Shown: positions 15,429 to 58,760, counted from the first letter of the stretch. The stretch: DNA of 64,000 bases from IMGVR_UViG_3300037054_000148:62001-126000; one strand, 5' to 3'. A program made the numbers and translations. The notes: generated by a model from the letters alone, not told the origin.

Positions 15429-19879
<4,451 letters not shown>

Positions 19880-19883
<4 letters not shown>

Positions 19884-24035: not shown

Positions 24036-26657
<2,622 letters not shown>

Positions 26658-26660
26658 AAT

Positions 26661-27251
26661 ATGAAAACACTTATCGGTCATGACATTGGGCAATACGAAT
26701 TCAACGCTGCGGCACGGACCATTACCTTCAATGGTCTCCCTCCGTTTGCACTAGAGCAAATTCTGCTCATAACCAATGAGAACCCAAATATCATCATATA
26801 CAATTTTGCAGATCCAACCCCTAATGGTGGAATCCTGGTGGGTAATGTTCTGACTCTAGACTTTAACACAACTTCGATGTTGAACACTGACCCATTGCAG
26901 ATTTACATCGACCTACCTACGACTGCTCCAAATGATAACGCTGCAATGAACGATGCTTACACCCATCTCCTACTTCAAAAAATTTGTGATTTGCTAGAAC
27001 CAATGGCCACACAGGATGTGGCACAGAGGCAGAGAGTCACAATTGATGCAATCACTGGAAGTCTCACCCTAGGCACTGTTAGCACAGTTACCGGTGTCAC
27101 TGCTGTTACCACCCTCAGCACCATTTCAAACCCAGTTCCAGTTGGCAACATTGCAACCCTAGGTGGGGGCAATCCTGAGTGGACTTTTATGGATATAACA
27201 AGACAATCCTATGCAATTGCAATTCGTTCCCAGTTACAGTTTGGAAATTGA
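26661..27251 (+). CDS. Virion fibre-associated protein
   Basis: 196 aa; YEFNAAARTITF...ILLITN...IIYNFAD motif recalled from phage structural proteins; TVSTVTGVTAVTTLST repeat. Confidence 0.55.
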   Translation: MKTLIGHDIGQYEFNAAARTITFNGLPPFALEQILLITNENPNIIIYNFADPTPNGGILVGNVLTLDFNTTSMLNTDPLQIYIDLPTTAPNDNAAMNDAYTHLLLQKICDLLEPMATQDVAQRQRVTIDAITGSLTLGTVSTVTGVTAVTTLSTISNPVPVGNIATLGGGNPEWTFMDITRQSYAIAIRSQLQFGN

Positions 27252-27253
27252 TC

Positions 27254-27781
27254 ATGGCTAGCGGAATCTACAGTATCACCATTAACGGCAAAACCTACAT
27301 AGGCTCTGCTATAAACTTTAAAAGTCGTTGGACTAACCATAAAAATCAGTTAAATAAAAATATACATAAAAATAAATATCTCCAAAATGCTTGGAATAAA
27401 TACAAAGAAATGGTATTTGAGATCATTTGCGAATGTCCAATTTCCTGTTTACTTGGTATGGAACAACATTATATCAATAAATATTTTGATAATCAAATAA
27501 ATTGTTATAATATGAACTCAATAGCTGGCTCAAGTTTAGGTGCTCATATATCTGAGGAAACTAAGCAAAAAATGAGAGAACTTAATAAAGGGAATAAACA
27601 TAGTTGTGGGCATAAAAATAGTTTAGGATACAAACATTCAGATGAGTTTAAATTAAAAATGTCAGAAAGAAAAAAAGGAAACACTTTTTGGCAAGGTAAA
27701 AAACACTCAGAGGAAACTAAGCAAAAAATGAAAGATACTATAAAAAGAAGTAAAGAACTTAAATACAGAAAGGATATATAA
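27254..27781 (+). CDS. GIY-YIG homing endonuclease with NUMOD3-type repeats
   Basis: MASGIY...YIGS...RW..H...H.NKYLQNAWNKY...EQ; HSEETKQKM; AT-rich; true start ATG 27254. Confidence 0.9.
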   Translation: MASGIYSITINGKTYIGSAINFKSRWTNHKNQLNKNIHKNKYLQNAWNKYKEMVFEIICECPISCLLGMEQHYINKYFDNQINCYNMNSIAGSSLGAHISEETKQKMRELNKGNKHSCGHKNSLGYKHSDEFKLKMSERKKGNTFWQGKKHSEETKQKMKDTIKRSKELKYRKDI

Positions 27782-27783
27782 AT

Positions 27784-30700
27784 ATGGCATCACTTATTAA
27801 CACTTTACGCAAGCAGGTTGACCTCCCTGTCTGGGAATGGCTTCGCTTCTCTCCAATCGCATCAGCAGTCCCATCTTGCACCTGCTCAGCTAATAATAGC
27901 CAGTACAACAAAATACAAGGTAGGTATATCTACTACTTGATTACTGCTGCTAACTTTTGGCGTTATGACACCTATACAGATACGTTTGAACAACTTCAAA
28001 CCCCACCCATTGCTCCAGCCACATGGGCGGATATAGAATTTGAACAGTGTCAGGGCATAGAAGGGTTTGTCTTGGGGGCTACCTCCAACACTCTGACTAT
28101 TCCAGCTTATTCTTCTGGCTCTTTTAGAGGTTATGATGTAAAAATTATTGGTGGGACCGGTATGGGGCAACGTAGAATCATTTCATACGTTAATGAGCCC
28201 GTGATCGTTGAAACTGGCGTCCCTACGGCTGTGAATAACGTTTTAGGTTCCTTCACCATTACTGATGCTACGAAAGCCTGGACTCCCAACCAATGGGCTG
28301 GCTACCAGCTTCGTATTTCGTATGGAACGGGTGTGGGTCAAGTTCGTAGAATTCTATACAATTCGGCTACGGTCCTAACCCTTGGTGACTCCACCATATC
28401 CGCTCAAAGCACTTGGTGTAATCCTAACATCACCTCACCAGCCATTGTCGCAACCGCTGGCTCCCAGTCTATTTATGTGATTGAGTCTTCGGTTGTCACA
28501 GTTGATTCACCATGGTTGATCACTCCTGATAAAACCTCTCAGTATATGGTTGAGTCAGGGGTCATTTCCTTATATTCTAGTGCAGCGGCCACTCCATTCT
28601 ATACTCTTCAATACTACGACATTGCTTCGGACCTTTGGTACATCAAAACTGCTAATACTCTAAACGTATCAGCAGTTGGAACTGATGGAAACTGTGACCA
28701 TGCTGGGTATGCGGCTGTTGTGTGGACCAGAGGAACCGCTACAGTCGCTGGAACCGCCACCACCCTAACTGACACTACTCAAAATTGGGCAGTGAATCAG
28801 TTCGCTGGGTACTACATTAACTTCACGGGTGGAACCGGTGAAGGGCAGTTATCAAAAATTGCCTCCAACACCAACACAGTTCTAACTTTTGCCACCGTCA
28901 CCACCCCACCCGACACTACCACCGATTATGTGATAGAAGGGTATGATTGCGGAACCCTCACCACCGGAGGCACCTCTACCCTAACCGATTCAACTAAAAC
29001 TTGGCCAGTAAACAGATGGGCCAATTTTATGGTTAAAATTCTCTTCGGGACAGGTAAGGGCCAGTATATGCAGATTGCATCAAATACTGCCACCACTTTA
29101 ACCCTAGTTAAACCCTTGGCAACCACCACAGATACCACATCTACTTATTCCATCCTCCCAGATGGTAACAAGACCTACCTGATGATTGGTGGGCAGGCCA
29201 CCACCTTCATGTACAACTACAGTGATGACCTTCTGACAGAAGGAAGATGGCAGGACTCAGGTATAGCTTGTAACGCAGTGGTGACTTATAGCACTATGCG
29301 CCCAATTGGCATTGCTTCAGCGGTTCACGCTACCACCAACGCCACCATCACCACTTCATTCCCACACTACCTAAAGGTAGGTATGTCGGTCACGGTAAAG
29401 GGGATGACAGATTCCAATTACAACACCACCGCCGTAATCAACAGTGTCCCCTCAACCACTCAGTTCACCTATACGATGGCCGGAACCCCCGCCGTCGATA
29501 CGGTGGCTGGAGTTCAAAACACCACAGTTCTCACCGATTACACAAAAAATTGGACAGTAAATCAGTGGGCCGGGTACCAGTGCTACATGACTGTTTCAGC
29601 CGTGACCGCTGCGACTGGTTTGGCCACCGGACAGGTGCTTCAGGTTTTGGCAAACACAGCCAACGCATTAATTTTTGTAGCGGCGGGTACCGCTCCCATC
29701 ACCGGCACCACTCGCTACATCCTCACCCCTAGAGCTACACCAGGGTTGATGGATTGTGGTCTTGCCACTGGCACTCAGTCAACCTCTCTATTAACAGACA
29801 CAACAAAAGCAAGCAATCTAAATGCTTCGATCTCGGCTGGAAGTAATACGCTGACGATCAACCCCGTCACCTTCACCGCTAGCTTCGCCAACAATCAAAT
29901 GACCCTTACGGTTCCTCCGGTAAATGGGGTTATCCAGGTTGGAAATCTTATCTCTGGTGTGGGCATTCTTCCCAATACCTACATCTCGGCACTGACTTCT
30001 GGAACCGCAAATACCCTTGGAGCCGTATATACATTGACTCCCCAAGGAACAATCGCTTCCGCAGGTGGTCAGTGCTCTCTGTCTGGCTCCTCCATGACCA
30101 TCACTACGGTCCCCACAACTGGTGTATACGCTCCTGGTCAGCTTATTTCAGGAACTGGTATTACTGCTGGAACAACCATAGTGTCCTTAACTTCTGGGAC
30201 AGCTAATACTATTGGTGCTGTGTATCTCTGTAGCGCAGCAATGACTACAGAATCGGCTGAATCGGTAATCTCTAACTTTGGAGTTGGCACGATAGCGGCT
30301 GAAACAGTGACCTGTTACCCACAGGGTCAGATCAACCCAGGAATGTTGGTTACATCTACTGGCTCTACGGGTGGGCAGATGTCATTTGCTACTAACGTAG
30401 CTACCATTACAACTGTTCCAACCTCTGGTTCAATTGCTATTGGTCAAACAATCCAGTCCGCTGGAGCAGCAAATGGAGCCGTTATTATTGCTCTTGCATC
30501 TGGAACTTTAAACGTTCTCGCATCTACATATACATTATCAACCTCACCAGGAACAATCGCTGCTCAGGCAGTAACAACTTCAAATCTTACCTTTGCAACA
30601 GGTGGCTCCGCATCATTCGCCACCAATGTGATGACTTTAACAGTTGCTCCTACTCTTGGGTCAATAGCTGTTGGTCAATATATTACTGGTGCTTCTGCAA

Positions 30701-31770
30701 GTATCCCAGCGGGGACGTACATTACTGGATTACTCACTGGTAACCTGAATGCTGTTTCATCCACATACTCTTTATCAACCTCACCAGGAACAATTGTTGC
30801 CGGAGCTATCACAGCTTCAAATGGAACCGGCTCATTTGGTGGTCAGGCGTCATTCGCAACTAACATAATGACTCTAACTACAATCCCAGCCGTGGGAGCC
30901 ATCACCATTGGAGCAATCGTAACGGCTGGAGCAGTGCCGGTAGGGACGACTATCACAGGTCTACTCACCGGGACACTTAACGCTGTGTCTTCCACTTATT
31001 CACTGTCTACTTACCCCGGCACAGTCGGTGCTGAAGCCATCACCACAAGCGCCATCCCAGTCGGCACGGTCATAACCCAACAGCTAACCTCTACGATGCC
31101 AAATGGTGCGAATGGTGGAACTGGGACATACCTCCTCTCCCTCCCCGCAGCCAATACCCTCACCTATGCTGCCCTTGATTATATGTGGGTTGTTAATGCG
31201 TTTGCTGGTCGTAAATGTAAGTTGATTGGAGCCACTGGTCAATCTCAGGAGTTCTCAGTAGGCTCTAATACCAATTGCACTATTGCAATGACAGCTATTA
31301 CAACCGCCCCAGTGACTCTTGCCACCTCATATGCACTACTCCAGCAGCCTGTTCGTGGAACTGGTTTTTGCATAGAAGGTATTTTTGGTTTATCGGATAC
31401 TAGTAACTCCGGAAAATGGTGGATTGCGGCACGTGCCGGGGCAGCAGTTGGGTTTGATAAACTAGATATTACGACTGATACATTTTACATGATACCAACC
31501 TCTCCACAGACGGAAACCCTGTCTACTGGCTCAATGTATGCTTATGACGGTCAGGATAGACTTTACTTCACCAAAGAAGCAACCCAGAGAATGTATTATA
31601 TGGACTTAAAGACAAACCATATTCATGGAGCGGGCATGTATCCCTATGCTGCCCCCACAGCTCTCCTTGGAAACCGAATGGAAATCTTTCAGACAAACGA
31701 TGGACTTAATTACCTCTGGATCAATCGGGAAACCAACTTGGAGAATTTTAGACAGCTTCTTTTCTACTAA
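27784..31770 (+). CDS. Large multi-repeat virion/fibre protein (propeller-like ends with nested beta-repeat insertions)
   Basis: 1328 aa; FWRYDTYTDTF and FDKLDITTDTF kelch-like ends; repeats TLTD.T..W..NQ.AG and SFATN..TLT...GT.I..L.SGT.N. Confidence 0.65.
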   Translation: MASLINTLRKQVDLPVWEWLRFSPIASAVPSCTCSANNSQYNKIQGRYIYYLITAANFWRYDTYTDTFEQLQTPPIAPATWADIEFEQCQGIEGFVLGATSNTLTIPAYSSGSFRGYDVKIIGGTGMGQRRIISYVNEPVIVETGVPTAVNNVLGSFTITDATKAWTPNQWAGYQLRISYGTGVGQVRRILYNSATVLTLGDSTISAQSTWCNPNITSPAIVATAGSQSIYVIESSVVTVDSPWLITPDKTSQYMVESGVISLYSSAAATPFYTLQYYDIASDLWYIKTANTLNVSAVGTDGNCDHAGYAAVVWTRGTATVAGTATTLTDTTQNWAVNQFAGYYINFTGGTGEGQLSKIASNTNTVLTFATVTTPPDTTTDYVIEGYDCGTLTTGGTSTLTDSTKTWPVNRWANFMVKILFGTGKGQYMQIASNTATTLTLVKPLATTTDTTSTYSILPDGNKTYLMIGGQATTFMYNYSDDLLTEGRWQDSGIACNAVVTYSTMRPIGIASAVHATTNATITTSFPHYLKVGMSVTVKGMTDSNYNTTAVINSVPSTTQFTYTMAGTPAVDTVAGVQNTTVLTDYTKNWTVNQWAGYQCYMTVSAVTAATGLATGQVLQVLANTANALIFVAAGTAPITGTTRYILTPRATPGLMDCGLATGTQSTSLLTDTTKASNLNASISAGSNTLTINPVTFTASFANNQMTLTVPPVNGVIQVGNLISGVGILPNTYISALTSGTANTLGAVYTLTPQGTIASAGGQCSLSGSSMTITTVPTTGVYAPGQLISGTGITAGTTIVSLTSGTANTIGAVYLCSAAMTTESAESVISNFGVGTIAAETVTCYPQGQINPGMLVTSTGSTGGQMSFATNVATITTVPTSGSIAIGQTIQSAGAANGAVIIALASGTLNVLASTYTLSTSPGTIAAQAVTTSNLTFATGGSASFATNVMTLTVAPTLGSIAVGQYITGASASIPAGTYITGLLTGNLNAVSSTYSLSTSPGTIVAGAITASNGTGSFGGQASFATNIMTLTTIPAVGAITIGAIVTAGAVPVGTTITGLLTGTLNAVSSTYSLSTYPGTVGAEAITTSAIPVGTVITQQLTSTMPNGANGGTGTYLLSLPAANTLTYAALDYMWVVNAFAGRKCKLIGATGQSQEFSVGSNTNCTIAMTAITTAPVTLATSYALLQQPVRGTGFCIEGIFGLSDTSNSGKWWIAARAGAAVGFDKLDITTDTFYMIPTSPQTETLSTGSMYAYDGQDRLYFTKEATQRMYYMDLKTNHIHGAGMYPYAAPTALLGNRMEIFQTNDGLNYLWINRETNLENFRQLLFY

Positions 31771-31783
31771 ACAAGGCTAAAAG

Positions 31784-33424
31784 ATGTATGTAAGTATTGT
31801 CAACGAATATGGTCGGACGATTCAAATCAATACTCGTCAGATCAATTACGTACAGATTGATGGTAAGACCATGTTCCTCAATTATTTTGGGGGACAGTCT
31901 ACCGCTACCTCGTCCAATCTGGTGCAAATCCAGACCTTGCTGACTGTTCTTCTCGCCCAGCCCTACTTTCTAGATTTGCGGCAAAACGGGAGTGGCTTCC
32001 TTCTCAACCTTTCGGCCATTCGCTATACTGATTTTGCTCCAATTGCTGGTTCGGTATTCGTTTATTTCAACGCAGTCAACATTATTGTAAAGCTTCCCGC
32101 TTCGCTCGAACCAGCTCTTTCCACAGCCCTTGCAGCCTATGTGGATACGGGGGGTGGGGGAGCAGGCAATGGCACCTCCCTCAATGATATCATTTCCCAA
32201 CCCAGTCACGGTTTTCAGATAGGGGATATCCTGGGGTATGACGGAACGGTTTGGTTTCTCGCACAAGCGAACACCGATGCAACTTCTGAAGTTTATGGAA
32301 TCGTATCAAGCATAACGGATCAAAATACCTTTACTCTCACCACCTCTGGGTATGTGGCCGGTTTGACTGGCCTCACTCCTGGTGGTACCTATTTCCTCAG
32401 CGATTCTGTGCCGGGGAGTATGTCTTTGACCGAACCCACTACCCCTGGGCAAATTAGCAAGCCCATTTTCTTAGCTATGAGTCTGACCAGTGGCCTCTTC
32501 GTTGAAATGCGAGGAGAGTTGGTTCAGTCTGGAGGGTCCGGTGGGGGAAATGGAGCCGCCCTCCTGGACCCTATCCAGCAGACTGCTCATGGTTTCACCG
32601 TTGGGGATATACTTCGTTACGATGGCACCGGATGGGTCTGGTCTCAGGCTAATTTGGATGCCAACTCCGAAGTTTACGGAATGGTTTCGGTTGTAGTTGA
32701 TCCTGATAACTTCATCATCACCACATCTGGGTACGTTACGGGTCTGGTCGGTCTCACCCCTGGAACCACTTATTTTCTTAGTGCTGTGACCCCAGGTAGG
32801 ATGACCCCCACGGAGCCAACCGGAGATGGGGAAATCAGCAAGCCTATTTTCCTATCTACCAGCCCTACTAGTGGTCTGTTCACAGATATGCGAGGTGAAT
32901 TGATTGCATCCGGAGGATTGGGCGCGAATGGGACGGCATTGTCTGATTCCATCATGCAAATTAACCATGGCTTCTCTATTGGAGACGCAGTTCGATTTGA
33001 TGGGACCGAGTGGGTGTGGTCTCAGGCTGATTCGGATGTTGATTCTGAGGTGTATGGTCTGGTTTCAAACGTTATTGATCTAGATAATTTCACCATCACC
33101 ACTTCTGGATATATAGTTGGTCTAAGCGGCCTGATTCCCGGTACAACCTATTTTTTGAGTGCCCAGATTCCTGGGGGATTAACGTCCACAGAGCCTTTGG
33201 CGGATGGTCAGGTCAGTAAGCCACTGTTTTTGGCTACTAGCTCATCGAGTGGTCTATATATTGACATGCGTGGGGAACTCATTTCCATTGGTGGGAGCCC
33301 AGACACCTATACGAACGAAACCCCCACACCAGTTACGGTTGGGGGGATTCCGGCAGGCTCCACATTTGTAGGTTTGACTACGCAACAAATGTGGGATTGG
33401 TTACTCTACTCTATTCACCCTTAG
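31784..33424 (+). CDS. Virion protein with three tandem Q..HGF domains
   Basis: 546 aa; three ~120 aa repeats Q..HGF..GD...DGT.W...QA..D..SEVYG...GL.PG.TYFLS...SKP.FLA...MRGEL. Confidence 0.7.
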   Translation: MYVSIVNEYGRTIQINTRQINYVQIDGKTMFLNYFGGQSTATSSNLVQIQTLLTVLLAQPYFLDLRQNGSGFLLNLSAIRYTDFAPIAGSVFVYFNAVNIIVKLPASLEPALSTALAAYVDTGGGGAGNGTSLNDIISQPSHGFQIGDILGYDGTVWFLAQANTDATSEVYGIVSSITDQNTFTLTTSGYVAGLTGLTPGGTYFLSDSVPGSMSLTEPTTPGQISKPIFLAMSLTSGLFVEMRGELVQSGGSGGGNGAALLDPIQQTAHGFTVGDILRYDGTGWVWSQANLDANSEVYGMVSVVVDPDNFIITTSGYVTGLVGLTPGTTYFLSAVTPGRMTPTEPTGDGEISKPIFLSTSPTSGLFTDMRGELIASGGLGANGTALSDSIMQINHGFSIGDAVRFDGTEWVWSQADSDVDSEVYGLVSNVIDLDNFTITTSGYIVGLSGLIPGTTYFLSAQIPGGLTSTEPLADGQVSKPLFLATSSSSGLYIDMRGELISIGGSPDTYTNETPTPVTVGGIPAGSTFVGLTTQQMWDWLLYSIHP

Positions 33425-33433
33425 CTTCTAAGG

Positions 33434-34228
33434 CTATTTTAGACCGTTCCTTCTTACAATATTTGTTATAGTGGAAGCACTCAGCCCTAATTGACGGGCT
33501 ATCGCTTTGTTTGATATACTTCGTGTTTTCCACAATCTTATGGCTTCCGTCTCAATACCCACATGTATTTTGTTTAGGGCTGATTGCTGCTTAAATCTAA
33601 GTTTTTGGGCGGTTGACATACGAATCCTGGTTTCTTTGGTAGGAGATGCCCCTTTATTCACAGGAGTTCGGCCTGTCAATGTCTCTGCTATCTTTTTTCT
33701 TGTCTCGTCACTAACTTTATGCCCCATTAGAGTTGCCGAGGTTCTCTTTCTTACCCCCTCTGATGGAGGTGGCCTGTGATGCTGAGACTCAGACACCCTC
33801 TTTTTTGTTTCCTCAGAGTGGGGGGCTCGGGCTTTTCGTGCAACTGATAATGCTTTTTTATGCTCTTCCGAAAAAGGCACACCTTTCTTAGCTAGGGATA
33901 GCTTCTGTTTCGCCTTCTCAGTATGTTTTAGCCCTAAGCAAGATCCCGCCGCAGGGGCAGTATTATAGAGAGATGCCCCCATAAATCTGAGAGAATTCAT
34001 CCAATACTGCTCAGTTTCAGTTAGAAGATTGTCAGAACACACCTCCAGAATCTCAAAGATAAAGGCGTCTGCACCATATTTATTCCAGGAGTTCTGTAAA
34101 TAATGGCAAGAGTGACGCTGGTGTTTAAGGTTGCATTTGTGCTGTACCCACCGTCTTTTAGGGTTGCACGATTGGCCTACGTACCCTTTGTTAGAAATTA
34201 CATTGATTATTAGGTAGATTCCACCCAT
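33434..34228 (-). CDS. GIY-YIG homing endonuclease with NUMOD3 repeats and C-terminal HTH
   Basis: MGGIYLIIN...YVGQS...RW..H...LQNSWNKYG; SNKAIARQLGLSASTITNIV HTH; ATG 34228 after GGAAGGTGG. Confidence 0.9.
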   Translation of the reverse strand: MGGIYLIINVISNKGYVGQSCNPKRRWVQHKCNLKHQRHSCHYLQNSWNKYGADAFIFEILEVCSDNLLTETEQYWMNSLRFMGASLYNTAPAAGSCLGLKHTEKAKQKLSLAKKGVPFSEEHKKALSVARKARAPHSEETKKRVSESQHHRPPPSEGVRKRTSATLMGHKVSDETRKKIAETLTGRTPVNKGASPTKETRIRMSTAQKLRFKQQSALNKIHVGIETEAIRLWKTRSISNKAIARQLGLSASTITNIVRRNGLK

Positions 34229-37011
34229 TTTCCACCTTCCCAAACATTTTTGATTGCTTTTGCCACCACTTCATTTGGGATTCCGGCCATACAAGCGTGA
34301 CAAGGATGGGCATAATCTTGCCCAGGAGGGTTATCGCACGGCCCTTTAGACATAGAGGAAATAGCTGGATCCTCTTTGTAGCATGGGCGGCATGGCAGTT
34401 TTACCCCAATGTTCAGATTGTGATCGTAGCCCGAGCCCTGAGCACTTGTTGACCCCCAGAGAATAACAGCAGGAACCTTATAGGGCTTTCCGTCTCCTTT
34501 GCTCCAAATATAATTGGTCACATGGTTTGGGAATGAGTCTACCCCCACGTGCATTTTTGCATTAGCAATCAAATCAATTGCTAGTTTGAGGGTCTTTCCC
34601 ATATGGGTATGGTCCACTCCAGGGATTTTGGGATCCCCACTTCCGCCAATCTGTATAAAGGGGATGCTGGGGCATTGTTTGACTATCTCTCCCCACCGTT
34701 CAGCACTGATTGACTTGTACACTGACCATCCTGCCTTTACTTGTAGGGTTGCATAGTCGGCTGGTAGCTCTAACTTTTCTCGGTCAATAGAGGGAGTAGG
34801 GAGGCTCAGCGCCACCATCTCTTCGGGGAGCCCCATTTCTTTTGCAAAATACTTAATTAGATGCTGTCGCATTTCCGTATTAGGGTAATCTTCATGAAGA
34901 GGATAACCGATTAAATTGATAACTTTCTCATATTCATGCGCCTTCCCTGCCAGTGTGTTGAAATCAAACCATGCGTCTACCCCAGCATCTTTAAACATCA
35001 ACTCTAGTTCCGCACCAATTGCTGGATGGCAGTAATAGTGTATTTTGCAATTAGGGTGCTTCTTTTTGAGACTTGGAATCAAATTAAGCGTGATTAAAAT
35101 GTCTCCGACAGCACCCGGTCGATTAAGGGCAATTTGTTTAACTTTCTTCGTCGTTTTTTTTAGATAGTTCTGGGAGATTAGAGCCTGATTTAGGGCATTG
35201 ACCCTCTGGTCCCACTCCTTATCCTCGCATCCGATCTGTTTCTTGGCTTCAGCAGCCCATTTGTAAGCTGCCTCCTTGTCCCCAAGGTTCTCATAGCAGA
35301 AACTGAGCATCCGAGTCGGCTGGTCAGTGTATTTGTTGGGTTCACGCCAGAGTTCTGTGGGCTCCTGCTTGCGTCCGAATGCCTCAAGGCAGTAACCGAT
35401 GGTTTTGTTCCAGTCGCCGGTCTGGAAGGCCATGTAGCCCAGTTCCATCCAGAACTCAGACCAATCAGGAGCCTTGGAGAGACCAAATAGGAGGGACTTC
35501 TCTGCTTCGGCCAGCATTCCAGCCGCACGTTCGCACCTTCCCTTGTATAGGCAAGAAAAAAGATACTCGTCACGGAACGCATCACCGAAACTGATTCGCA
35601 TGTCGTAGTATTTAACGGCCTGGACGTAACGTCCCGCATCCTTATGCGTATTGGCCAGATAGAAAGCGGTCCTGGGATTTGGATCTTCTGCGATTTCTGC
35701 CTCTAGAATGCGGAGGTTACGCTGATTAGAATTCTCACCCACACCAGGGGCTGCATCATGGTGAATCACGCTGTCCTTGAGGGTGATCCCAGGTCGTCCT
35801 CCATGATTTGGATATTCATGGATTCGTCCTGAGAAGTTGACTCCCTCACGAGTCTTCCAGGCACGATGGTGAACCCATTTCATGCCATCAGTCTCAATCA
35901 TGATGCCAAACACCTTGTATTGAGTCAGATAGAAGGCACGTTTTAAATTCTCAGGAGTCAATAGCTCGTCATCTGCATCAAACCAAATTAGATAGTCGGC
36001 AGAGGGAATCCGATCAATCTTATCTACGAATATGTTCCTGGCCTTACTGAAGTCCCACAGCTTCCAATCTCCAGATTCATCCTGCTTTGAGGCCCCCGTA
36101 TAGGTTTCGAAGGTAAGGGGCTTAGTCCAAGCAGCCTTGGCCACTTCCTCAGTCTTGTCCGTAGAGCCGGTGTCAATGACGACCAAACCATCCACCACAT
36201 CTTCAATGGATTTTAGAACACGGGGAAGATCACGTTCCTCATTTTTGACAATCATCCCACACCAGACTTCTGGCTTTTTCTGGATGGGGCGCAGCACGAT
36301 ATCTCGTTGCCCTGCTCCATCCATCGGAGAAGTCCAATCTATAGTGAAAAGGTCTTGCCCTTGAACCAGAAGCTCTAAAATACTGGATAAGGAGTGGAAG
36401 AACGGATGAATTGTATAGTGCCCCTCATCTAAATCTCGTTCAAATCCGCTCACTCCATGATCTGGAAGGCGTAAGAAAAGGATCCCATCATTAGCTAGCA
36501 AACTCTTTATTTTTCCTAGAGCGGCCAGTGGGTTATAGAGATGTTCCATCAAATGAATCATGGTAACAGCCTGGAATTTTTCTGTATGTGTCCACTCCCT
36601 AATCTGCTCTTCAGTGAGGGCCTCAAAGTCAGCCATCAACATCGGAACATCAAGCTCCTTGCTGTATTCTGGAACAATTTCAATGTTATCCATTCCAAAG
36701 GCTTCACATCCTAGTTCCTTAAAACAATAGCTCAAATATGGAAATTTTGAGCCAATGTCCAACACCTTGCCGGGTTTCCCTCCCATGAAGTTATTGAGGA
36801 TGCTCTCTGCGAGAGACTGATTGATCCCTTTTTCATAGTCGGACATTAGATGACCTGTAAACCCGCCATTTTGGTCTTTTTCATGAGCAGCCTCATAGAC
36901 TTTGGGGGGCATAGGGTTCTGGAACCAGCAATCACAAACAGGGCACATCCAATAGGGGGTGTCCTGATACTTATGAACCGTCTGGGTGGAACAAATTGGG
37001 CAATTTGCCAT
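34210..37011 (-). CDS. Multidomain SAM methyltransferase - GT2 glycosyltransferase - TPR - GT9 glycosyltransferase
   Basis: 933 aa; CPIC/CPVC + VLDIGS + HLMEHL (class I MTase); MIVKNEE, IDTGSTDKT, DFSKARN, FDADDE, GRIHE (GT2); TPR helices; RPGAVGD, GVDSFPNHV, ILWGST, CRPC (GT9). Confidence 0.85.
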   Translation of the reverse strand: MANCPICSTQTVHKYQDTPYWMCPVCDCWFQNPMPPKVYEAAHEKDQNGGFTGHLMSDYEKGINQSLAESILNNFMGGKPGKVLDIGSKFPYLSYCFKELGCEAFGMDNIEIVPEYSKELDVPMLMADFEALTEEQIREWTHTEKFQAVTMIHLMEHLYNPLAALGKIKSLLANDGILFLRLPDHGVSGFERDLDEGHYTIHPFFHSLSSILELLVQGQDLFTIDWTSPMDGAGQRDIVLRPIQKKPEVWCGMIVKNEERDLPRVLKSIEDVVDGLVVIDTGSTDKTEEVAKAAWTKPLTFETYTGASKQDESGDWKLWDFSKARNIFVDKIDRIPSADYLIWFDADDELLTPENLKRAFYLTQYKVFGIMIETDGMKWVHHRAWKTREGVNFSGRIHEYPNHGGRPGITLKDSVIHHDAAPGVGENSNQRNLRILEAEIAEDPNPRTAFYLANTHKDAGRYVQAVKYYDMRISFGDAFRDEYLFSCLYKGRCERAAGMLAEAEKSLLFGLSKAPDWSEFWMELGYMAFQTGDWNKTIGYCLEAFGRKQEPTELWREPNKYTDQPTRMLSFCYENLGDKEAAYKWAAEAKKQIGCEDKEWDQRVNALNQALISQNYLKKTTKKVKQIALNRPGAVGDILITLNLIPSLKKKHPNCKIHYYCHPAIGAELELMFKDAGVDAWFDFNTLAGKAHEYEKVINLIGYPLHEDYPNTEMRQHLIKYFAKEMGLPEEMVALSLPTPSIDREKLELPADYATLQVKAGWSVYKSISAERWGEIVKQCPSIPFIQIGGSGDPKIPGVDHTHMGKTLKLAIDLIANAKMHVGVDSFPNHVTNYIWSKGDGKPYKVPAVILWGSTSAQGSGYDHNLNIGVKLPCRPCYKEDPAISSMSKGPCDNPPGQDYAHPCHACMAGIPNEVVAKAIKNVWEGGKWVEST

Positions 37012-37595
37012 TAAACTTCTCCTTTGGGCAGGAATACAAGTATCCCCGTATCTGTTTTAATACTCTGTGCAGTATGCGTGGAAGAAAAAGTTCCAGTAAA
37101 CTCCTCCCAATTCACATTTATATACTTGACATGATTTTCCTTCACCTGATCCACCGTAAAATTCGGGTTTTGGGGGTTCACCAACATCCTCATGTCATCA
37201 CAAATGATCACATCCCTCTCTATGTTAGGTTTCAAGGCTCTGATGAGTTCTAACTCCTTGAATAAGGGCCAACGAGTTTCAGAGGTCTCCTCCACATCGT
37301 AAAAAGCAGGAAAATGAGCATCCAACCAGAAGAGCGTAGGCCCCGGAAGTCTAGGCAGGAGAGTCTCTAGGAATGTGAGACTATCAGTGTTCATAATGAA
37401 CGCTTCGGGTAGCAACCGGTAAGTAGAATCTACCGCTTCTTGCCTGATATCGCAGGAAAATAGAAAATGCTCGTCAAACCCACATTTTTTGGCAAAACTC
37501 ATTCCTTCGCCATCCTGGCAACCTGTTTCCACAAACAGAGATAACCCATACTGCTCTCGATACTGTTTTATTGGGGTAGCGATTAAATGTGTCAT
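37011..37595 (-). CDS. Class I SAM-dependent methyltransferase-like protein
   Basis: 194 aa; FVETG...G.G, CDI, LFWLDAH, VIICDD. Confidence 0.7.
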   Translation of the reverse strand: MTHLIATPIKQYREQYGLSLFVETGCQDGEGMSFAKKCGFDEHFLFSCDIRQEAVDSTYRLLPEAFIMNTDSLTFLETLLPRLPGPTLFWLDAHFPAFYDVEETSETRWPLFKELELIRALKPNIERDVIICDDMRMLVNPQNPNFTVDQVKENHVKYINVNWEEFTGTFSSTHTAQSIKTDTGILVFLPKGEV

Positions 37596-38347
37596 AGATT
37601 GAAATTGGCCCAGGTTAAAGATGCTTGTAGCTCGGGGAACTGATCAGGTTGGATACAAAATAAATCACATCCGTGCTCATACACGTTGTAGTTGAGGTGT
37701 TTAAAATAACGAACTAAGGCTCGTTTATCAGATTTCAGCCACTCTACCCATGCGATAGGCTTGAACTTGGTGAAAGTTTCGACCCCACCCTCCAAAATCT
37801 CTTCTTCCATGCCTTCGGCATCAATTTTGATCAGATCTAGACGTTTAAAGTTCCACGCATCAATTGGCGCTACTCGAACTTGTTCATCTGGGTCATCCGG
37901 AAGCCTTTCTTGCCCAATATCATTCACTTTTGGTTTAAATTCAAAGCTTCCAAAATTTCCAGCCTTGCTGTAGTCGTATTGAGGAATGGCCATAACCCCC
38001 TCCTCCCGACCCATCACAAAATTATGCACATAGACGTTCTGTAGAGAGTTCAGAGAGACAGTTCCAGCCACCATATAGGCTAGAATGCGCTGGCCTTCGT
38101 ACGAAAATACATCTCCACCCAACGGCTCGACGGCTTTGGCTAGGGCTAAGGTGAATAGGCCAAAGTTAGCTCCGATGTCCACACAAACAGTGTGCTCTCC
38201 ACATTTTCTAGCCAAATCACAGAGGAACATGATATCCTCATGATCGAACGCTTTGCCAGTTCGCCGCAAGCTCCCTGTTTGATTGATATCGTTTCCATTC
38301 ACGATTACCGGACCGTAATCGCTTTTTATTACCCCATTGTATATCAT
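37592..38347 (-). CDS. FkbM-family methyltransferase
   Basis: 251 aa; VDIGANFGLF, SYEGQ, LDLIKIDAEGMEEEILEG, KP..WVE. Confidence 0.9.
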   Translation of the reverse strand: MIYNGVIKSDYGPVIVNGNDINQTGSLRRTGKAFDHEDIMFLCDLARKCGEHTVCVDIGANFGLFTLALAKAVEPLGGDVFSYEGQRILAYMVAGTVSLNSLQNVYVHNFVMGREEGVMAIPQYDYSKAGNFGSFEFKPKVNDIGQERLPDDPDEQVRVAPIDAWNFKRLDLIKIDAEGMEEEILEGGVETFTKFKPIAWVEWLKSDKRALVRYFKHLNYNVYEHGCDLFCIQPDQFPELQASLTWANFNL

Positions 38348-39555
38348 GCAACCTTCCTAGCAAGAATATAGAAACTCCAAAACGCATCCGGATAGCAAGA
38401 ATACTCTTCTACACGTAGATTGGTGTTTTGATTGATCCATTTAGTTAGAGTGAGAGGGGATGGAGCCCATACGTGGTTATCCCCCACCCATAGCCCCCCA
38501 GGCTTCCACATTTCCATAGATGGGTGCGGTAGGTAGATTAAACAGGTTCCTCCAACCCTGAGAGAGGCATCCCACAATCTTAACTCTTCTCCCCATTCTT
38601 TTATATGTTCTAGGCAGTGAGAAGAGAAGATGTAGTCGAATGGAGCTTGGTTAAACCGGCTCCTCTCGCTTTCATTATGAATGGCGATGGCTCCTGGAAG
38701 TGGCCACTGACTGGAACCAACATCAAGCCCCTTTCCTCGGCAGTGCATTAAGGCGATGGGTTTAATTCCCTCCGTTCCATTACCTTCATTCAGGTATACT
38801 GGGTATTTCTCCTCTTGTAGGGCGGATTCGATTTCCCACGTTAACTCTGTCTTGTTCATAGCCCTCTGAACCCCTGGATAGGCTCGGGTGGCCGCAGGGT
38901 AGAGGGGGCTGTAAAATCCCACAATTTTTCTTACCCCAGTCGCATGAGCGATGTGAAGCCCAGAGCTATCGGGGCCAATGAACATATCAGCTTTGCGGAT
39001 AGCATCTACAAATTCTTCATTTGGCATTCCAGACCGAAGTAGGGTGATCGGATTTCCAGATTTTCGCATAAGCTCCATGGGGAGGTCTGATGCGGTAAAG
39101 TCTCGCCCATCTGCTCTCCCACTTTCTCGTAGTTGGATTACAATCGAGTGATCAGATTCAGGCCCGTAGGAGTTCAAACAGGGGGTTCGGCGCAAGAGTC
39201 GAACATTTGCAACCGCAGCAAACGCATCTACTCCATGTAGTCCACAAAGCTGCTCGATCACTCCATTAAAGGAGAAGTGGTTGACGGGAGTTTCCTCATC
39301 AAACAGCCCATTCATATCCGTAATGAGGGGTCCGGTTTCCATTTTTCCGTAACGGCTAAAATCGTCGTTCTCTAGGAGAACCCTCCACACGAATGGGCTG
39401 CCTGCTAACACCCAGGCATACTGCTTGTGAGTTCTGATGATGATTCGGGCCGGAGCATATTCATAATAGAGGGCTTCGATGGTTGGTTCGATCATCAACC
39501 AGTCCCCAATGCCACCACCTCTCGTAATCACGATATAGTTATAACCTTGGTCCAC
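38344..39555 (-). CDS. GT9-like glycosyltransferase fused to SAM methyltransferase
   Basis: 403 aa; GTG start after AGGAG; RGGGIGDWL and FIGPDSSGLHIA (GT9); GLDVGS, FDYIFSSHCLEH, LRVGG..LIYLP (MTase). Confidence 0.8.
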   Translation of the reverse strand: MDQGYNYIVITRGGGIGDWLMIEPTIEALYYEYAPARIIIRTHKQYAWVLAGSPFVWRVLLENDDFSRYGKMETGPLITDMNGLFDEETPVNHFSFNGVIEQLCGLHGVDAFAAVANVRLLRRTPCLNSYGPESDHSIVIQLRESGRADGRDFTASDLPMELMRKSGNPITLLRSGMPNEEFVDAIRKADMFIGPDSSGLHIAHATGVRKIVGFYSPLYPAATRAYPGVQRAMNKTELTWEIESALQEEKYPVYLNEGNGTEGIKPIALMHCRGKGLDVGSSQWPLPGAIAIHNESERSRFNQAPFDYIFSSHCLEHIKEWGEELRLWDASLRVGGTCLIYLPHPSMEMWKPGGLWVGDNHVWAPSPLTLTKWINQNTNLRVEEYSCYPDAFWSFYILARKVA

Positions 39556-39607
39556 AGAAACTCCTGCTCATTCTCTTACTAATACTCCGTCAGAGACCAA
39601 ACTATGC

Positions 39608-39623
39608 GGTATTTTCAAATACC
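39608..39623. promoter_or_regulatory. Short palindrome in divergent promoter region
   Basis: GGTATTT-TC-AAATACC between divergent operons. Confidence 0.3.
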
Positions 39624-39650
39624 AGCCCCTTTTAGAGAGGTGCTAGTATC

Positions 39651-40073
39651 ATGTTCAAGTTTTCCGCAAAGCTCTTGACCGCAGACGCATGGGATGGGAT
39701 CGATATTAAGCTCCACAACCGCGAACAGGATTTGTGGGCCAGACAGGTCTGGCGTGGGCTTAATGACCAATATAGCAAACTTAAAGAGCAGTACAAAATC
39801 AAGGGTGTGGCCCTCAAAGAGTGGCTCAAGGAATACGGTATCGGTGGGCTCGTGCAGTCTAAGGATCAGGTTGTTGTTGGAGCGATGAGAGAAATTGCCA
39901 AACTGTTAGACGAGACGGTGAAATCCAACAAAGAGGGTGGGGCTTATCGTCAGAATGAGGTCCAGGCGTTCAAGAACGAGTATGGCACCAACAGAATTGA
40001 CTGGCTTTACGCTCTGAACGGTCAGAAACGCAGTAGTAAGAGTCGTAAGGTCAATTCGGGATTGTTGGAGTAA
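39651..40073 (+). CDS. Hypothetical protein
   Basis: 140 aa; GAGGTG RBS; no motif recognised. Confidence 0.6.
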   Translation: MFKFSAKLLTADAWDGIDIKLHNREQDLWARQVWRGLNDQYSKLKEQYKIKGVALKEWLKEYGIGGLVQSKDQVVVGAMREIAKLLDETVKSNKEGGAYRQNEVQAFKNEYGTNRIDWLYALNGQKRSSKSRKVNSGLLE

Positions 40074-40075
40074 CG

Positions 40076-40828
40076 ATGGATATTCAGGCCATTGCTAAGA
40101 AATACATCAACATGATGCCTAAGTCCAAATCTGGACTGACTATGCCCACTCCAAAAATTGTGATTGTCAATGCGTTGACAACCAAGTGGAACGGGATTAC
40201 CGTATGGGACGGCAAGGGTCTGGATACGGTGGTAATCAAGCTCCAGAAGCGAATCACCAAGGATGAAGAGTCATTAAACCGGATTATCGCTCACGAAATC
40301 TGCCATGCCTGGGCTTTCTGGATGGTGGGAATCAACGAGGAACGGAGTCCCTGGCACCGTGGTCACTCGGCTACGGGAGGATGGTGGAAGGCGGCTCAGA
40401 TTATCAACCAGAATGAAGGGAACCCCGAGTTTGTGACTGAAATCTCGGATGAGGCCATTGTGATAAATAATGACAAAGTGTTTTACGTTTACTTGGAAAA
40501 GAACTCCAGGGGATTGTTTTGGGCATGGTTCAGCCGAGTTACAGATAATCTAGCCCGACAGCTTCGTTATCGAATCAGTAACGCAGAGCTTTATAACTAC
40601 CCTATTACGGTAATTAAGACAAGTGATGAGAGGTTTCTCATCCCAGCCGCAAAACTTCCCAGATGTGCTAGATTAGCGGAAATGCCAGAAAATTTAACTA
40701 ACAAGATCGAAGAGGCACTCATGAGAAACCCAATTGATATTGATACACCTAGGGATATCAAAACAATTATTTCTCAGGCTAAGACAGCCGAATGGAAACA
40801 GAAACGGAAAGCTCATTTTCTAGTTTGA
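40076..40828 (+). CDS. SprT-like zinc metallopeptidase domain protein
   Basis: IKLQ...IIAHEICHA...GH...W (HExxH plus downstream His). Confidence 0.7.
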   Translation: MDIQAIAKKYINMMPKSKSGLTMPTPKIVIVNALTTKWNGITVWDGKGLDTVVIKLQKRITKDEESLNRIIAHEICHAWAFWMVGINEERSPWHRGHSATGGWWKAAQIINQNEGNPEFVTEISDEAIVINNDKVFYVYLEKNSRGLFWAWFSRVTDNLARQLRYRISNAELYNYPITVIKTSDERFLIPAAKLPRCARLAEMPENLTNKIEEALMRNPIDIDTPRDIKTIISQAKTAEWKQKRKAHFLV

Positions 40829-58713: not shown

Positions 58714-58760
58714 ACAGTAAGTCATAAAGTTGGAATATGCAGTTCTCTGAAGAGACCCTC

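What the first reader, a model, noticed from the sequence alone, without database searches (positions are those of the whole stretch)
34210..37011. Four-module glycan assembly line in one polypeptide (Zn-MTase - GT2 - TPR - GT9)
Seen: four recognisable modules in 933 aa. A peptide-acceptor-type GT2/TPR, a GT-B elongating enzyme and a methyltransferase could prime, extend and cap a glycan in one chain. This parallels chlorovirus A064R (two GTs plus MTase acting on capsid glycans); I do not know this arrangement from tailed phages.
Basis: partly seen in the sequence, partly recalled or inferred. Interest (0 to 1): 0.7.

Follow-up and report, generated by a model that had tools for sequence, protein, structure and literature searches.

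The report
Phage collagen-fibre glycosylation enzyme
A 933-residue protein of an uncultured 314-kb tailed phage really does fuse a zinc-ribbon methyltransferase, a protein-directed GT2 sugar transferase with TPR repeats, and a GT9 heptosyltransferase-like domain. It belongs to a large undescribed family, shared by phages and bacteria, that travels with collagen-like Gly-X-Thr fibre genes and most likely sugar-coats those fibres.

Summary
ORF 34210-37011 (-) is intact, 933 aa, and has four modules:
- A Cys4 zinc ribbon plus class I methyltransferase. The fold is closest to the NDP-sugar C3-methyltransferases KijD1, TcaB9 and MtmC.
- A GT-A GT2 domain of the SunS/ThuS/GmaR type.
- TPR repeats.
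- A GT9 GT-B domain (structural Z 19-21 to TibC, WaaF and WaaC) with a conserved Cys4 finger.

It ends a four-gene operon with three more methyltransferase or GT9 genes, in a jumbo myovirus.

The architecture is not phage-specific. About 1,000 representative clusters (at 50% identity) exist, including chromosomal copies in Casimicrobiaceae, other Betaproteobacteria, Holophagaceae and Methylocucumis.

The main new result is an association with collagen-like G-X-Thr repeat proteins:
- Two giant ones lie 7.6 and 14 kb away in the window.
- 27 of 50 viral loci and 17 of 26 bacterial loci have one within 10 kb. In bacteria it is usually directly upstream.
- 13 of 13 enzyme-bearing phage records carry such repeats, against 0 of 5 control phages.

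The closest experimental precedent is C. difficile SgtA (GT2+TPR), which adds O-GlcNAc to Thr in the collagen repeats of BclA3.

Most likely function: cytoplasmic O-glycosylation (prime, heptosylate, methylate) of collagen-like tail fibres. Acceptor, donors and order of action are inferred, not shown.

The parts
34210..37011 (-). 933-aa four-module enzyme (whole ORF including the stop codon)
36877..37011 (-). Residues 1-45: Cys4 zinc ribbon. C4, C7, C23 and C26 are invariant.
36277..36840 (-). Residues 58-245: class I SAM methyltransferase. D85 and G87 are invariant; D108 and E156-H157 are kept in 90% or more of homologues.
35716..36276 (-). Residues 246-432: GT-A GT2 domain of SunS/ThuS/GmaR type. 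The D280-T-G-S-x-D285 motif and the DxD motif D345/D347/D348 are invariant.
35200..35715 (-). Residues 433-604: TPR / helical repeat module
34213..35154 (-). Residues 620-933: GT9-type GT-B domain. R631, G633, G636 and D637 are invariant (N-lobe motif), as are G823, D825, S826 and H830 (C-lobe motif).
34291..34392 (-). Residues 874-907: conserved Cys4 finger (C874-x2-C877-x14-C892-x14-C907) in the C-lobe
37011..37595 (-). 194-aa operon partner, probably another class I methyltransferase (a lead only). Its stop overlaps the enzyme's start by 1 nt.
37592..38347 (-). 251-aa FkbM-family methyltransferase with weak RfbT likeness. Overlaps the next gene by 4 nt.
38344..39555 (-). 403-aa accessory protein and first gene of the operon. 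It carries a GT9 piece (just below the Pfam cut-off) and a Methyltransf_23 domain (just above it). It is not a recent paralogue of the 933-aa enzyme.
15429..19883 (+). 1484-aa collagen-like protein with 320 G-X-Y triplets, Y = Thr/Ser in 85%. Candidate acceptor. It follows a baseplate/tail-like gene.
24036..26657 (+). 873-aa collagen-like protein with 255 G-X-Y triplets, Y = Thr/Ser in 80%. Candidate acceptor.
26661..33424 (+). Four ORFs (196, 200, 1328 and 546 aa) that follow the second collagen-like gene and converge on the enzyme operon. Homologues of the 196-aa and 1328-aa ORFs follow a collagen-like stretch in a related 221-kb phage. Presumed fibre module, function unknown.

Best explanation
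The ORF encodes a soluble, cytoplasmic, multi-domain protein O-glycosylation enzyme. Its acceptors are the Thr/Ser residues at the Y position of collagen-like G-X-Thr repeat fibre proteins. In this phage the candidates are the 1484-aa and 873-aa proteins at 15429-19883 and 24036-26657.

Proposed steps (all inferred, none shown):
- The TPR module holds the unfolded repeat chain.
- The GT2 domain primes Thr/Ser with a hexose or HexNAc from a host UDP-sugar, as SgtA does on BclA3.
- The GT9 domain adds heptose from host ADP-heptose, either onto that sugar or directly onto the protein as TibC does.
- The Zn-ribbon methyltransferase, together with the three upstream operon products (a GT9-MTase fusion, an FkbM MTase and a probable MTase), methylates and further elaborates the glycan.

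The glycan coat would stabilise or hydrate a proline-poor triple helix and set the surface chemistry of the fibres.

What is shown: the four intact, conserved modules and their closest folds; the operon; the family's spread; and its statistical and positional association with collagen-like genes.
For: Modules and catalytic motifs
- All four modules are intact and their motifs are conserved across 54 homologues at 45-83% identity.

The GT2-TPR module is of the protein/peptide-glycosylating kind
- The family profile hits GmaR at 1.6e-20, a ThuS-like enzyme at 2e-20 and SunS at 1e-18.
- C. difficile SgtA (GT-A + 4 TPR) adds beta-O-GlcNAc to Thr in GPT collagen repeats of BclA3 and is encoded next to it (PMC7157674).

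The GT9 fold
- Z is 21.2 to TibC (a protein heptosyltransferase), 21.1 to WaaF and 19 to WaaC. All other GT-B folds score 11.6 or less.
- The conserved Cys4 finger sits at the same relative place as TibC's iron finger.
- A homologue at 54% identity is followed in its operon by GmhA-HldC, GmhB and HldA-type genes, which together make the ADP-heptose pathway.

The methyltransferase
- Its fold is nearest to sugar-directed Zn-domain methyltransferases.

The collagen link
- The two giant G-X-Thr proteins in the window have 80-85% Ser/Thr at Y.
- A collagen-like ORF lies within 10 kb in 27 of 50 viral loci, and within 700 bp in 9 of them. This holds even in lineages at 28-48% identity.
- In bacteria, 17 of 26 loci have one; in 14 it lies upstream on the same strand. 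The bacterial partners have Sec signal peptides.
- None of 35 Clostridia loci that carry only a SunS-like GT2 has one (Fisher p about 1e-8).
- 13 of 13 enzyme or GT2-TPR-bearing phage records carry G-x-T runs, against 0 of 5 large control phages covering 1.39 Mb (p = 1.2e-4).
- 6 of 80 random viral G-x-T loci carry a GT2-TPR homologue, including two giant-virus MAGs. Only 11 of 50,697 phage records do overall.

Link to virion genes
- In the isolate Tunturi_5, all 35 G-x-T hits fall inside the annotated tail fibre gp29, 3.7 kb from the GT2-TPR gene gp35.
- In a complete 42-kb phage the collagen-like gene follows the tail protein gene.

Other support
- One relative fuses a 2OG-Fe(II) oxygenase to the enzyme.
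- The fourth module is swapped in relatives, which fits an elongating role.
Against: - No biochemical data exist for any member of the family.
- In the window's own genome the proximity is not significant on its own. The nearest collagen-like gene is 7.6 kb away, P = 0.22 by random placement. Over five large genomes the combined P is only 0.029.
- 23 of 50 viral loci have no collagen-like ORF within 10 kb.
- Unfused GT2-TPR and GT9 homologues in small phages sit among early/replication genes, with no collagen-like gene within 10 kb.
- This phage has no detectable ADP-heptose or NDP-sugar genes, and none of 33 related viral records has a GmhA-type gene. Heptose use rests on one homologous locus plus the fold.
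- The GT9 domain of this protein misses the Pfam threshold.
- The enzyme-peptide complex prediction gave no answer.
The control set of 5 phages is small.
Confidence: 0.55

Rival explanations
1. Generic virion glycosylation. The enzyme decorates other structural proteins (capsid, sheath, or the non-collagen fibre proteins such as the 1328-aa and 546-aa ORFs next to it), as mycobacteriophages glycosylate capsid and tail-tube C-termini. The collagen-like genes are merely neighbours in the same tail module.
For: - The operon converges on the 1328-aa and 546-aa ORFs, which are closer than the collagen-like genes.
- Within-genome proximity to collagen-like genes is weak.
- Virion glycosylation of capsid and tail tube is documented for mycobacteriophages (cited in PMC12619734).
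Against: - Bacterial homologues have no virion genes, yet sit directly downstream of secreted collagen-like proteins.
- The 1328-aa and 546-aa neighbours are present only in the closest relatives, while collagen-like genes recur across the whole family.
- In the relative at 83% identity, L005, the collagen-like gene is the immediate neighbour, 376 bp away.
Confidence: 0.15
2. Host envelope remodelling. The GT9 and GT2 domains alter LPS core, O-antigen or another host surface glycan during infection (superinfection exclusion or receptor masking), as many phage 'moron' glycosyltransferases do.
For: - GT9 is classically the LPS-core heptosyltransferase family.
- PHROG and Phold-type annotation files such genes under 'moron/host takeover' (PMC11924767).
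- Unfused homologues in small phages lie among early genes beside a cellulose-synthase-like GT2.
- The FkbM neighbour resembles RfbT, an O-antigen methyltransferase.
Against: - The GT2 part is of the SunS/GmaR type and is fused to TPR repeats, which are protein-binding.
- The nearest GT9 structure by aligned length is the protein-acting TibC.
- A lipid-linked-glycan role would not predict the conserved pairing with collagen-like genes in bacteria and phages.
Confidence: 0.12
3. Glycocin-type peptide maturation. Like SunS or ThuS, the enzyme S- or O-glycosylates a small ribosomal peptide (a bacteriocin-like product).
For: The best NCBIfam hit is SunS (4e-11, far below its cut-off). SunS and a ThuS-like structure are top PDB profile hits.
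Against: - SPbeta, which carries true SunS, has no G-x-T runs and lacks the extra modules.
- No glycocin-type genes were recognised in any locus with called genes. A dedicated small-ORF search was not done.
Confidence: 0.03
4. DNA hypermodification. The transferases glycosylate and methylate modified bases of phage DNA.
For: - The operon borders DNA-metabolism genes (SprT-like, UvrD helicase, homing endonucleases).
- Phage glycosyltransferases that hypermodify DNA are known (10.1101/2023.12.21.572611, listed).
Against: - Chromosomal bacterial homologues lie beside secreted collagen-like proteins and housekeeping genes.
- The folds match protein- and sugar-directed enzymes, not DNA glycosyltransferases.
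Confidence: 0.02

Closest known systems
C. difficile SgtA / BclA3 (O-GlcNAc transferase of exosporium collagen-like protein)
   Same: - A GT-A GT2 domain followed by TPR repeats.
- The gene lies next to a collagen-like G-X-Thr protein.
- The acceptor shown experimentally is Thr in the repeats (PMC7157674).
- Stand-alone GT2-TPR relatives of the window's module are the same size, about 335-345 aa.
   Different: - SgtA is a single 358-aa enzyme, with no methyltransferase or GT9 fused.
- It is from a Gram-positive spore former, not a phage.
- Direct sequence comparison with SgtA could not be made here.
SunS / ThuS glycocin S/O-glycosyltransferases and Listeria GmaR (flagellin O-GlcNAc transferase)
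   Same: These are the best solved-structure relatives of residues 246-495, with profile E 1e-18 to 1e-20. All glycosylate peptides or proteins in the cytoplasm.
   Different: - Their acceptors are a small peptide or flagellin.
- They have no fused MTase or GT9.
- The NCBIfam SunS score of 42 bits is far below the 350-bit equivalog cut-off.
TibC / AAH bacterial autotransporter heptosyltransferases (BAHT)
   Same: - GT9-type GT-B fold: Z 21.2, 277 aligned residues, the longest of all matches.
- A Cys4 metal finger inserted near the C-terminus of the C-lobe. TibC has C339, C342, C358 and C370; this protein has C874, C877, C892 and C907.
- They act on repetitive proteins in the cytoplasm before Sec export, which fits the Sec-signal-bearing bacterial partners.
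   Different: - 12-14% identity, and no sequence-level hit.
- TibC's N-terminal beta-barrel is replaced here by the TPR/GT2/MTase modules.
- Thumb hairpin, dodecamer formation and iron binding are unknown.
LPS-core heptosyltransferases WaaC / WaaF and GT9 structure 3tov
   Same: - Fold Z 19-21.
- The N-terminal Gly-Asp motif, aligned to RfaQ positions 3-39, and the G-x-D-S...H C-lobe motif are invariant.
   Different: They act on lipid A-Kdo acceptors at the membrane, are single-domain, and have no Cys4 finger known to me (own knowledge).
KijD1 / TcaB9 / MtmC NDP-sugar C3-methyltransferases
   Same: An N-terminal Cys4 zinc domain followed by a SAM-binding Rossmann domain, with TM-score 0.67-0.74 normalised to the query. 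They fill the top 18 PDB matches.
   Different: - Their third domain, which binds the dTDP-sugar, is absent (TM-score normalised to the target about 0.45).
- Pfam's zinc-domain model PF08421 was not hit.
- The substrate here may be a protein-linked sugar rather than an NDP-sugar.
Chlorovirus PBCV-1 A064R
   Same: One viral polypeptide with two glycosyltransferase domains and a methyltransferase that together build and cap part of a virion glycan (PMC9614988).
   Different: - Different folds and order: GT-A, a novel GT, then a C-terminal MTase.
- It acts on N-glycans of the major capsid protein using UDP-rhamnose.
- It has no TPR and no GT9. Homology was not tested here.
Mimivirus/Marseillevirus L230 and mycobacteriophage virion glycosylation
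   Same: These are virus-encoded modifications of the virus's own structural proteins. L230 hydroxylates and glucosylates a viral collagen-like protein (PMC9614988). Mycobacteriophages glycosylate capsid and tail tube.
   Different: L230 acts on hydroxylysine, not Thr. The mycobacteriophage acceptors are C-terminal tails, not collagen repeats.

Membership tests
CAZy GT2 (GT-A), SunS/GmaR/SgtA-type protein glycosyltransferases | GT-A domain recognised by the GT2 model, with a DxD motif | tested here: met
   PF00535 scores 25.5 bits against a cut-off of 23.3. D345/D347/D348 and the D280-T-G-S-x-D285 motif are invariant in 54 sequences.
CAZy GT2 (GT-A), SunS/GmaR/SgtA-type protein glycosyltransferases | TPR / helical repeat domain directly C-terminal to the GT-A domain | tested here: met
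   TPR hits over residues 434-534. The profile matches TPR structures over 443-556, and SunS and the ThuS-like enzyme over 224-495.
CAZy GT2 (GT-A), SunS/GmaR/SgtA-type protein glycosyltransferases | Acceptor is a Ser/Thr/Cys of a protein or peptide | not testable with these tools
   Only gene-neighbourhood evidence is available. The complex prediction gave no answer.
SunS equivalog (TIGR04195) | Score above the curated equivalog cut-off | tested here: not met
   42.3 bits against a cut-off of 350. Related to SunS, but not a SunS.
CAZy GT9 (heptosyltransferases) | GT-B fold specifically like GT9 structures | tested here: met
   Z 19-21 to TibC, WaaF, 3tov and WaaC, against 11.6 or less for other GT-B folds. 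Foldseek E 1e-9 to 1e-11.
CAZy GT9 (heptosyltransferases) | Pfam PF01075 match | tested here: inconclusive
   No hit on the window's own protein. 31 of 54 homologous domains hit at E 0.01 or better, best 1.2e-7.
CAZy GT9 (heptosyltransferases) | Conserved N-lobe Gly-Asp motif and C-lobe G-x-D-S...H motif | tested here: met
   R631, G633, G636, D637 and G823, D825, S826, H830 are invariant. Residues 622-658 align to RfaQ positions 3-39. That these are the catalytic and donor-binding motifs is from my own knowledge of WaaC.
CAZy GT9 (heptosyltransferases) | ADP-heptose as donor | not testable with these tools
   Indirect evidence only. A homologue's operon holds the ADP-heptose pathway. Neither this phage nor any of 33 related viral records has a GmhA-type gene.
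BAHT (TibC/AAH) protein heptosyltransferases | Cys4 iron finger inserted in the C-lobe | tested here: inconclusive
   A conserved Cys4 cluster has similar spacing and relative position and lies in a loop-rich stretch of the model. Residue-level equivalence and the identity of the metal were not testable.
BAHT (TibC/AAH) protein heptosyltransferases | N-terminal beta-barrel domain, thumb hairpin, dodecameric ring | tested here: not met
   The structural alignment starts at TibC residue 86. Upstream of the GT9 domain lie TPR repeats, not a barrel. Oligomeric state is not testable. Not filed as a BAHT member.
TcaB9/KijD1/MtmC sugar C3-methyltransferases | Zn-binding Cys4 N-domain plus SAM domain | tested here: met
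   Invariant C4, C7, C23 and C26. The top 18 fold matches are from this family.
TcaB9/KijD1/MtmC sugar C3-methyltransferases | C-terminal NDP-sugar-binding domain | tested here: not met
   The matches cover only about 45% of the targets. The GT2 domain follows directly at residue 246. Not a member; same N-terminal two-domain fold only.
PBCV-1 A064R-like multi-transferase | Homology of the domains to A064R D1, D2 and D3 | not tested
The likeness is architectural only.

The most novel reading that the evidence does not exclude
A widespread, so far unrecognised collagen-glycosylation system is shared by tailed phages (jumbo and small), giant viruses and Gram-negative bacteria. In it, modular MTase-GT2-TPR-(GT9 or another GT) enzymes coat proline-poor G-X-Thr triple helices with methylated, heptose-containing O-glycans. 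In these phages glycosylation would be required for folding or stability and for receptor specificity of collagen-like tail fibres. Swapping the fourth module would then diversify fibre glycans, and hence host range or immune and defence evasion.
Probability: 0.4. Interest if true: 0.75.

Novelty: new variant of a known kind. Interest (0 to 1): 0.6.

Why it matters
- Virion glycosylation in tailed phages is known only from a few cases, and nobody has shown a glycosylated collagen-like phage fibre.
- If the inference holds, about 1,000 protein clusters annotated as 'methyltransferase' or 'cell-wall glycosyltransferase' are really collagen-fibre glycosylation enzymes.
- The many G-X-Thr 'tail fibre' proteins of phages, giant viruses and environmental bacteria would then be glycoproteins.
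- That bears on how proline-poor bacterial and viral collagens stay folded, on phage adsorption and host range, and on engineering recombinant collagen materials.
- A cultured model exists: Tunturi_5 gp35 and gp29.
- The fused enzyme would also be a compact three-activity tool for glyco-engineering.

Tried and rejected
- **Near-identical DNA in cultured phages:** none found.
- **Promoter and terminator scan of 33000-40200:** counts no better than shuffles.
- **Complex prediction of residues 240-933 with a 36-aa G-X-T peptide:** 'no answer', so not used as evidence.
- **Phage-encoded donor pathways:**
  - The own genome has no SIS_2/GmhA, NTP_transferase or Epimerase hit.
  - No SIS_2 hit in 33 related viral records.
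  - The idea that these phages make their own ADP-heptose was dropped. Only one homologous locus has the pathway.
- **Pfam sheath model PF04984:** found nothing, but PHROG identified the sheath at 50921-54796. The Pfam negative was therefore a sensitivity problem.
- **Is the 403-aa GT9-MTase a permuted duplicate of the 933-aa enzyme?** No detectable similarity.
- **Is the operon conserved as a unit?** No. The three upstream genes occur only in the closest relatives.
- **Within-genome proximity of enzyme and collagen-like genes:** weak (own genome P = 0.22, combined 0.029). The case therefore rests on cross-genome co-occurrence and on bacterial operon adjacency.
- **Source names for stand-alone GT2-TPR relatives:** uninformative.
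- **Direction of transfer between phages and bacteria:** the tree is unrooted and both labels are interleaved, with at least four changes. No direction is claimed.

Full report
**1. What is there**

The ORF exists exactly as reported: 34210-37011 on the minus strand, ATG start, 933 codons, no interruption. It is the last gene of a tightly packed same-strand set:
- 38344-39555 (403 aa).
- 37592-38347 (251 aa), overlapping the previous gene by 4 nt.
- 37011-37595 (194 aa), overlapping by 4 nt.
- The 933-aa ORF, overlapping by 1 nt.

The window is positions 62001-126000 of a 313,597-bp IMG/VR virus record that CheckV rates complete. The phage is a contractile-tailed jumbo phage:
- 50921-54796 matches tail sheath (phrog_2839, 1e-20).
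- 60896-61777 matches a head maturation protease.
- 13106-15016 weakly matches baseplate/tail proteins.
- The nearest cultured relative by sheath sequence is the Acidobacteria jumbo myovirus Tunturi_5, at 41.7% identity (PMC11924767).

**2. The four modules**

(a) *Zinc ribbon and methyltransferase, residues 1-245.*
- Methyltransf_23 matches above threshold.
- Four Cys (4, 7, 23, 26) are invariant in 54 homologues, as are D85 and G87. D108 and E156-H157 are kept in 90% or more.
- The AF2 model has pLDDT 92.9.
- Its 18 best PDB matches are all KijD1, TcaB9 and MtmC. These are NDP-sugar C3-methyltransferases with an N-terminal Cys4 zinc domain.
- Their third, sugar-nucleotide-binding domain is missing here.

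(b) *GT2, residues 246-432.*
- Pfam GT2 matches above threshold.
- The DxD motif and the D-T-G-S-x-D motif are invariant.
- The family profile hits GmaR (1.6e-20), a ThuS-like enzyme (2e-20) and SunS (1e-18). All three are cytoplasmic protein or peptide glycosyltransferases.

(c) *TPR, residues about 433-604*.

(d) *GT9, residues about 620-933.*
- Sequence models barely see it in this protein. NCBIfam gives a faint heptosyltransferase N-motif match at 622-658, and Pfam gives nothing.
- 31 of 54 homologous domains do hit PF01075.
- The AF2 model has pLDDT 91.1.
- It matches GT9 structures at Z 19-21 (TibC 21.2, WaaF 21.1, 3tov 20.5, WaaC 19). Every other GT-B fold scores 11.6 or less.
- A Cys4 cluster (874, 877, 892, 907) is conserved. 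It lies in a loop-rich stretch just before the C-terminal helices. This is the same relative place and a similar spacing as TibC's iron finger, Cys 339, 342, 358 and 370 (PMC4358343).

The caveat is that the GT9 call needs structure or family-level evidence.

**3. How common, and where**

- A word-indexed search found more than 100 full-length homologues at 45-83% identity.
- An exhaustive profile search found 1,017 cluster representatives at E 1e-30 or better. They include stand-alone GT2-TPR (about 335 aa), GT9 (about 300 aa) and MTase (about 230 aa) proteins, and larger fusions.
- No cultured phage has the full architecture. Only GT2-TPR pieces are found, in PaBG, Tunturi_5 and SPbeta SunS.
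- IMG/VR yields 52 loci, from jumbo contigs down to complete 42-47-kb phages with terminal repeats.
- A scan of one genome per prokaryotic species also found full-length copies in Casimicrobiaceae and other Betaproteobacteria (on contigs up to 1.3 Mb), Holophagaceae, Vicinamibacterales and the isolate Methylocucumis oryzae Sn10-6.
- The called-gene context of two such copies is plain chromosome: ABC transporter, PTS, MetX/MetW.
- A tree puts the window's protein in a low-GC viral clade that is sister to the high-GC betaproteobacterial clade. Jumbo-phage sequences form the deepest branch. Labels change at least four times and the tree is unrooted, so I claim no direction of transfer.
- The clade is diversified (about 50-60% identity within it), so this is not a very recent capture.

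**4. The collagen link**

In the window:
- Two giant ORFs are collagen-like. 15429-19883 has 320 G-X-Y triplets and 24036-26657 has 255.
- Thr or Ser fills 85% and 80% of Y positions, and there is little proline.

Across viral loci:
- 27 of 50 have such an ORF within 10 kb, and 9 have one within 700 bp. These include the most divergent lineages, at 28-48% identity.
- In L005, a relative at 83% identity, the nearest collagen-like ORF lies 376 bp from the enzyme.

Across bacterial loci:
- 17 of 26 have one. In 14 it lies upstream on the same strand, and in 10 of those within 500 bp.
- These proteins carry Sec signal peptides.

Controls:
- 35 Clostridia loci that carry only a SunS-like GT2 have none (Fisher p about 1e-8).
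- At record level, 13 of 13 enzyme or GT2-TPR-bearing phage records carry runs of G-x-T codons, with essentially none in a reversed-pattern control. This includes five records with no collagen-like gene near the enzyme.
- 0 of 5 large phages without the enzyme carry them: phage G, Finch, RedWattleHog, LR745208 and SPbeta, 1.39 Mb in all (p = 1.2e-4).
- Conversely, 6 of 80 arbitrary viral G-x-T loci hold a GT2-TPR homologue, two of them giant-virus MAGs. Only 11 of 50,697 cultured-phage records do overall.

Link to virion genes:
- In Tunturi_5 all 35 pattern hits fall in the annotated tail-fibre gene gp29, 3.7 kb from the GT2-TPR gene gp35.
- In a complete 42-kb phage the collagen-like gene follows the main tail protein gene.

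The honest weak point is that proximity within large genomes is only modest. For the window's own genome P = 0.22, and over five genomes the combined P is 0.029.

**5. Mechanism**

The nearest tested system is C. difficile SgtA. It is a 358-aa GT-A+TPR enzyme, encoded beside bclA3, that adds beta-O-GlcNAc to Thr of GPT collagen repeats (PMC7157674). On that basis I infer that:
- The GT2-TPR core primes Thr/Ser of the repeats.
- The GT9 domain adds heptose.
- The methyltransferase domain modifies the sugars.

Support for heptose:
- The GT9-specific fold.
- One homologue at 54% identity whose operon continues with GmhA-HldC, GmhB and HldA-type genes.
- This phage and 33 relatives lack a GmhA-type gene, so they would draw on host pools.

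Support for a sugar-directed methyltransferase:
- The KijD1/TcaB9 fold.
- The company of an FkbM/RfbT-like methyltransferase and a probable third one in the operon.

Support for a modular 'core plus variable extender' logic. In relatives the fourth module is:
- replaced by a second GT2, by Anp1 or by FkbM;
- lost altogether;
- joined by a 2OG-Fe(II) oxygenase;
- or permuted in order.

Glycosylation in the cytoplasm before export has precedent in TibC/AAH (PMC4358343). From my own knowledge, not tested here: O-glycosylated Thr at Y stabilises proline-poor triple helices (Riftia cuticle collagen). The review PMC8968730 makes the related point for BclA.

**6. Rivals**

- Generic virion glycosylation of other fibre or capsid proteins.
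- Host-envelope remodelling.
- Glycocin-type peptide maturation.
- DNA hypermodification.

The first two are not excluded. Unfused homologues in small phages sit among early genes beside a cellulose-synthase-like GT2, with no collagen-like gene nearby.

**7. Verdict**

The modules and the assembly-line idea stand. 'Capsid glycans' and 'phage-specific' do not.
- The finding is best described as a new, multi-domain variant of the SgtA-type collagen O-glycosylation system. It is widespread in uncultured phages and Gram-negative bacteria.
- It was not found in the literature I could search.

Noticed in passing
window 15429-19883 and 24036-26657: Two giant collagen-like ORFs (1484 and 873 aa) made almost wholly of G-X-Thr/Ser triplets. 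After the repeats, both carry a near-identical short motif of the form [11 protein letters not shown]-x-SWQPS. The whole genome has four such ORFs.
   Followed up: yes
window 33434-34243 (-), 40879-41532 (+), 47580-48377 (+), 58737-59561 (+): Four paralogous GIY-YIG homing endonuclease genes (phrog_314; NUMOD3 confirmed by Pfam in the two that were scanned) are scattered through 25 kb. One abuts and overlaps the 3' end of the enzyme ORF by 34 nt. It is absent from relatives at 83% identity.
   Followed up: partly
window 42574-45312 (-): A 912-aa UvrD-type helicase whose N-terminal domain matches in two stretches, with a sub-threshold intein-splicing hit at residues 474-507. Possibly an intein-containing helicase.
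   Followed up: no
window 50921-54796 (+): The tail sheath homology covers only residues 946-1288 of a 1291-aa protein. The 945-aa N-terminal extension has no match. The Pfam sheath model missed the gene altogether.
   Followed up: partly
L022:2041-3402 (IMGVR_UViG_3300016294_000004, 42-kb phage with terminal repeats): This small phage carries a full-length enzyme homologue. It also encodes a PurZ-like protein (phrog_1211, 2e-72), hinting at a 2-aminoadenine (Z) genome.
   Followed up: no
P0023 (1186 aa), P0071, P0116, P0118: Natural domain swaps in the family: a C-terminal 2OG-Fe(II) oxygenase added to the four modules (P0023), and FkbM (P0071), a second GT2 (P0116) or an Anp1-type domain (P0118) in place of GT9.
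   Followed up: partly
locus of P0053 (240-kb ENA contig, no DNA held): The enzyme is followed by an ADP-heptose pathway (SIS_2+CTP_transf_like, HAD, PfkB). A dTDP-rhamnose gene set lies upstream. A faint collagen hit and two pectate-lyase-like (tailspike-type) genes lie downstream.
   Followed up: partly
L018 (IMG/VR) and L063 (Vicinamibacterales MAG): The two enzyme sequences are identical, one in a 'viral' contig and the other in a bacterial MAG contig. This means either a prophage or mis-binning, and it blurs the viral/bacterial labels used in the tree.
   Followed up: no
L302 (Pseudomonas phage PaBG, NC_022096 170585-187613): PaBG has a similar local layout: a large tail fibre/intimin-like protein, a GT2-TPR gene (gp263), then a head maturation protease within 3 kb. 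Its four G-x-T runs lie 20 kb away.
   Followed up: partly
L144 and L118 (GVMAG giant-virus contigs): Giant-virus MAG contigs with G-x-T collagen-like arrays also carry a GT2-TPR homologue within a few kb. The pairing therefore reaches beyond phages and bacteria.
   Followed up: partly
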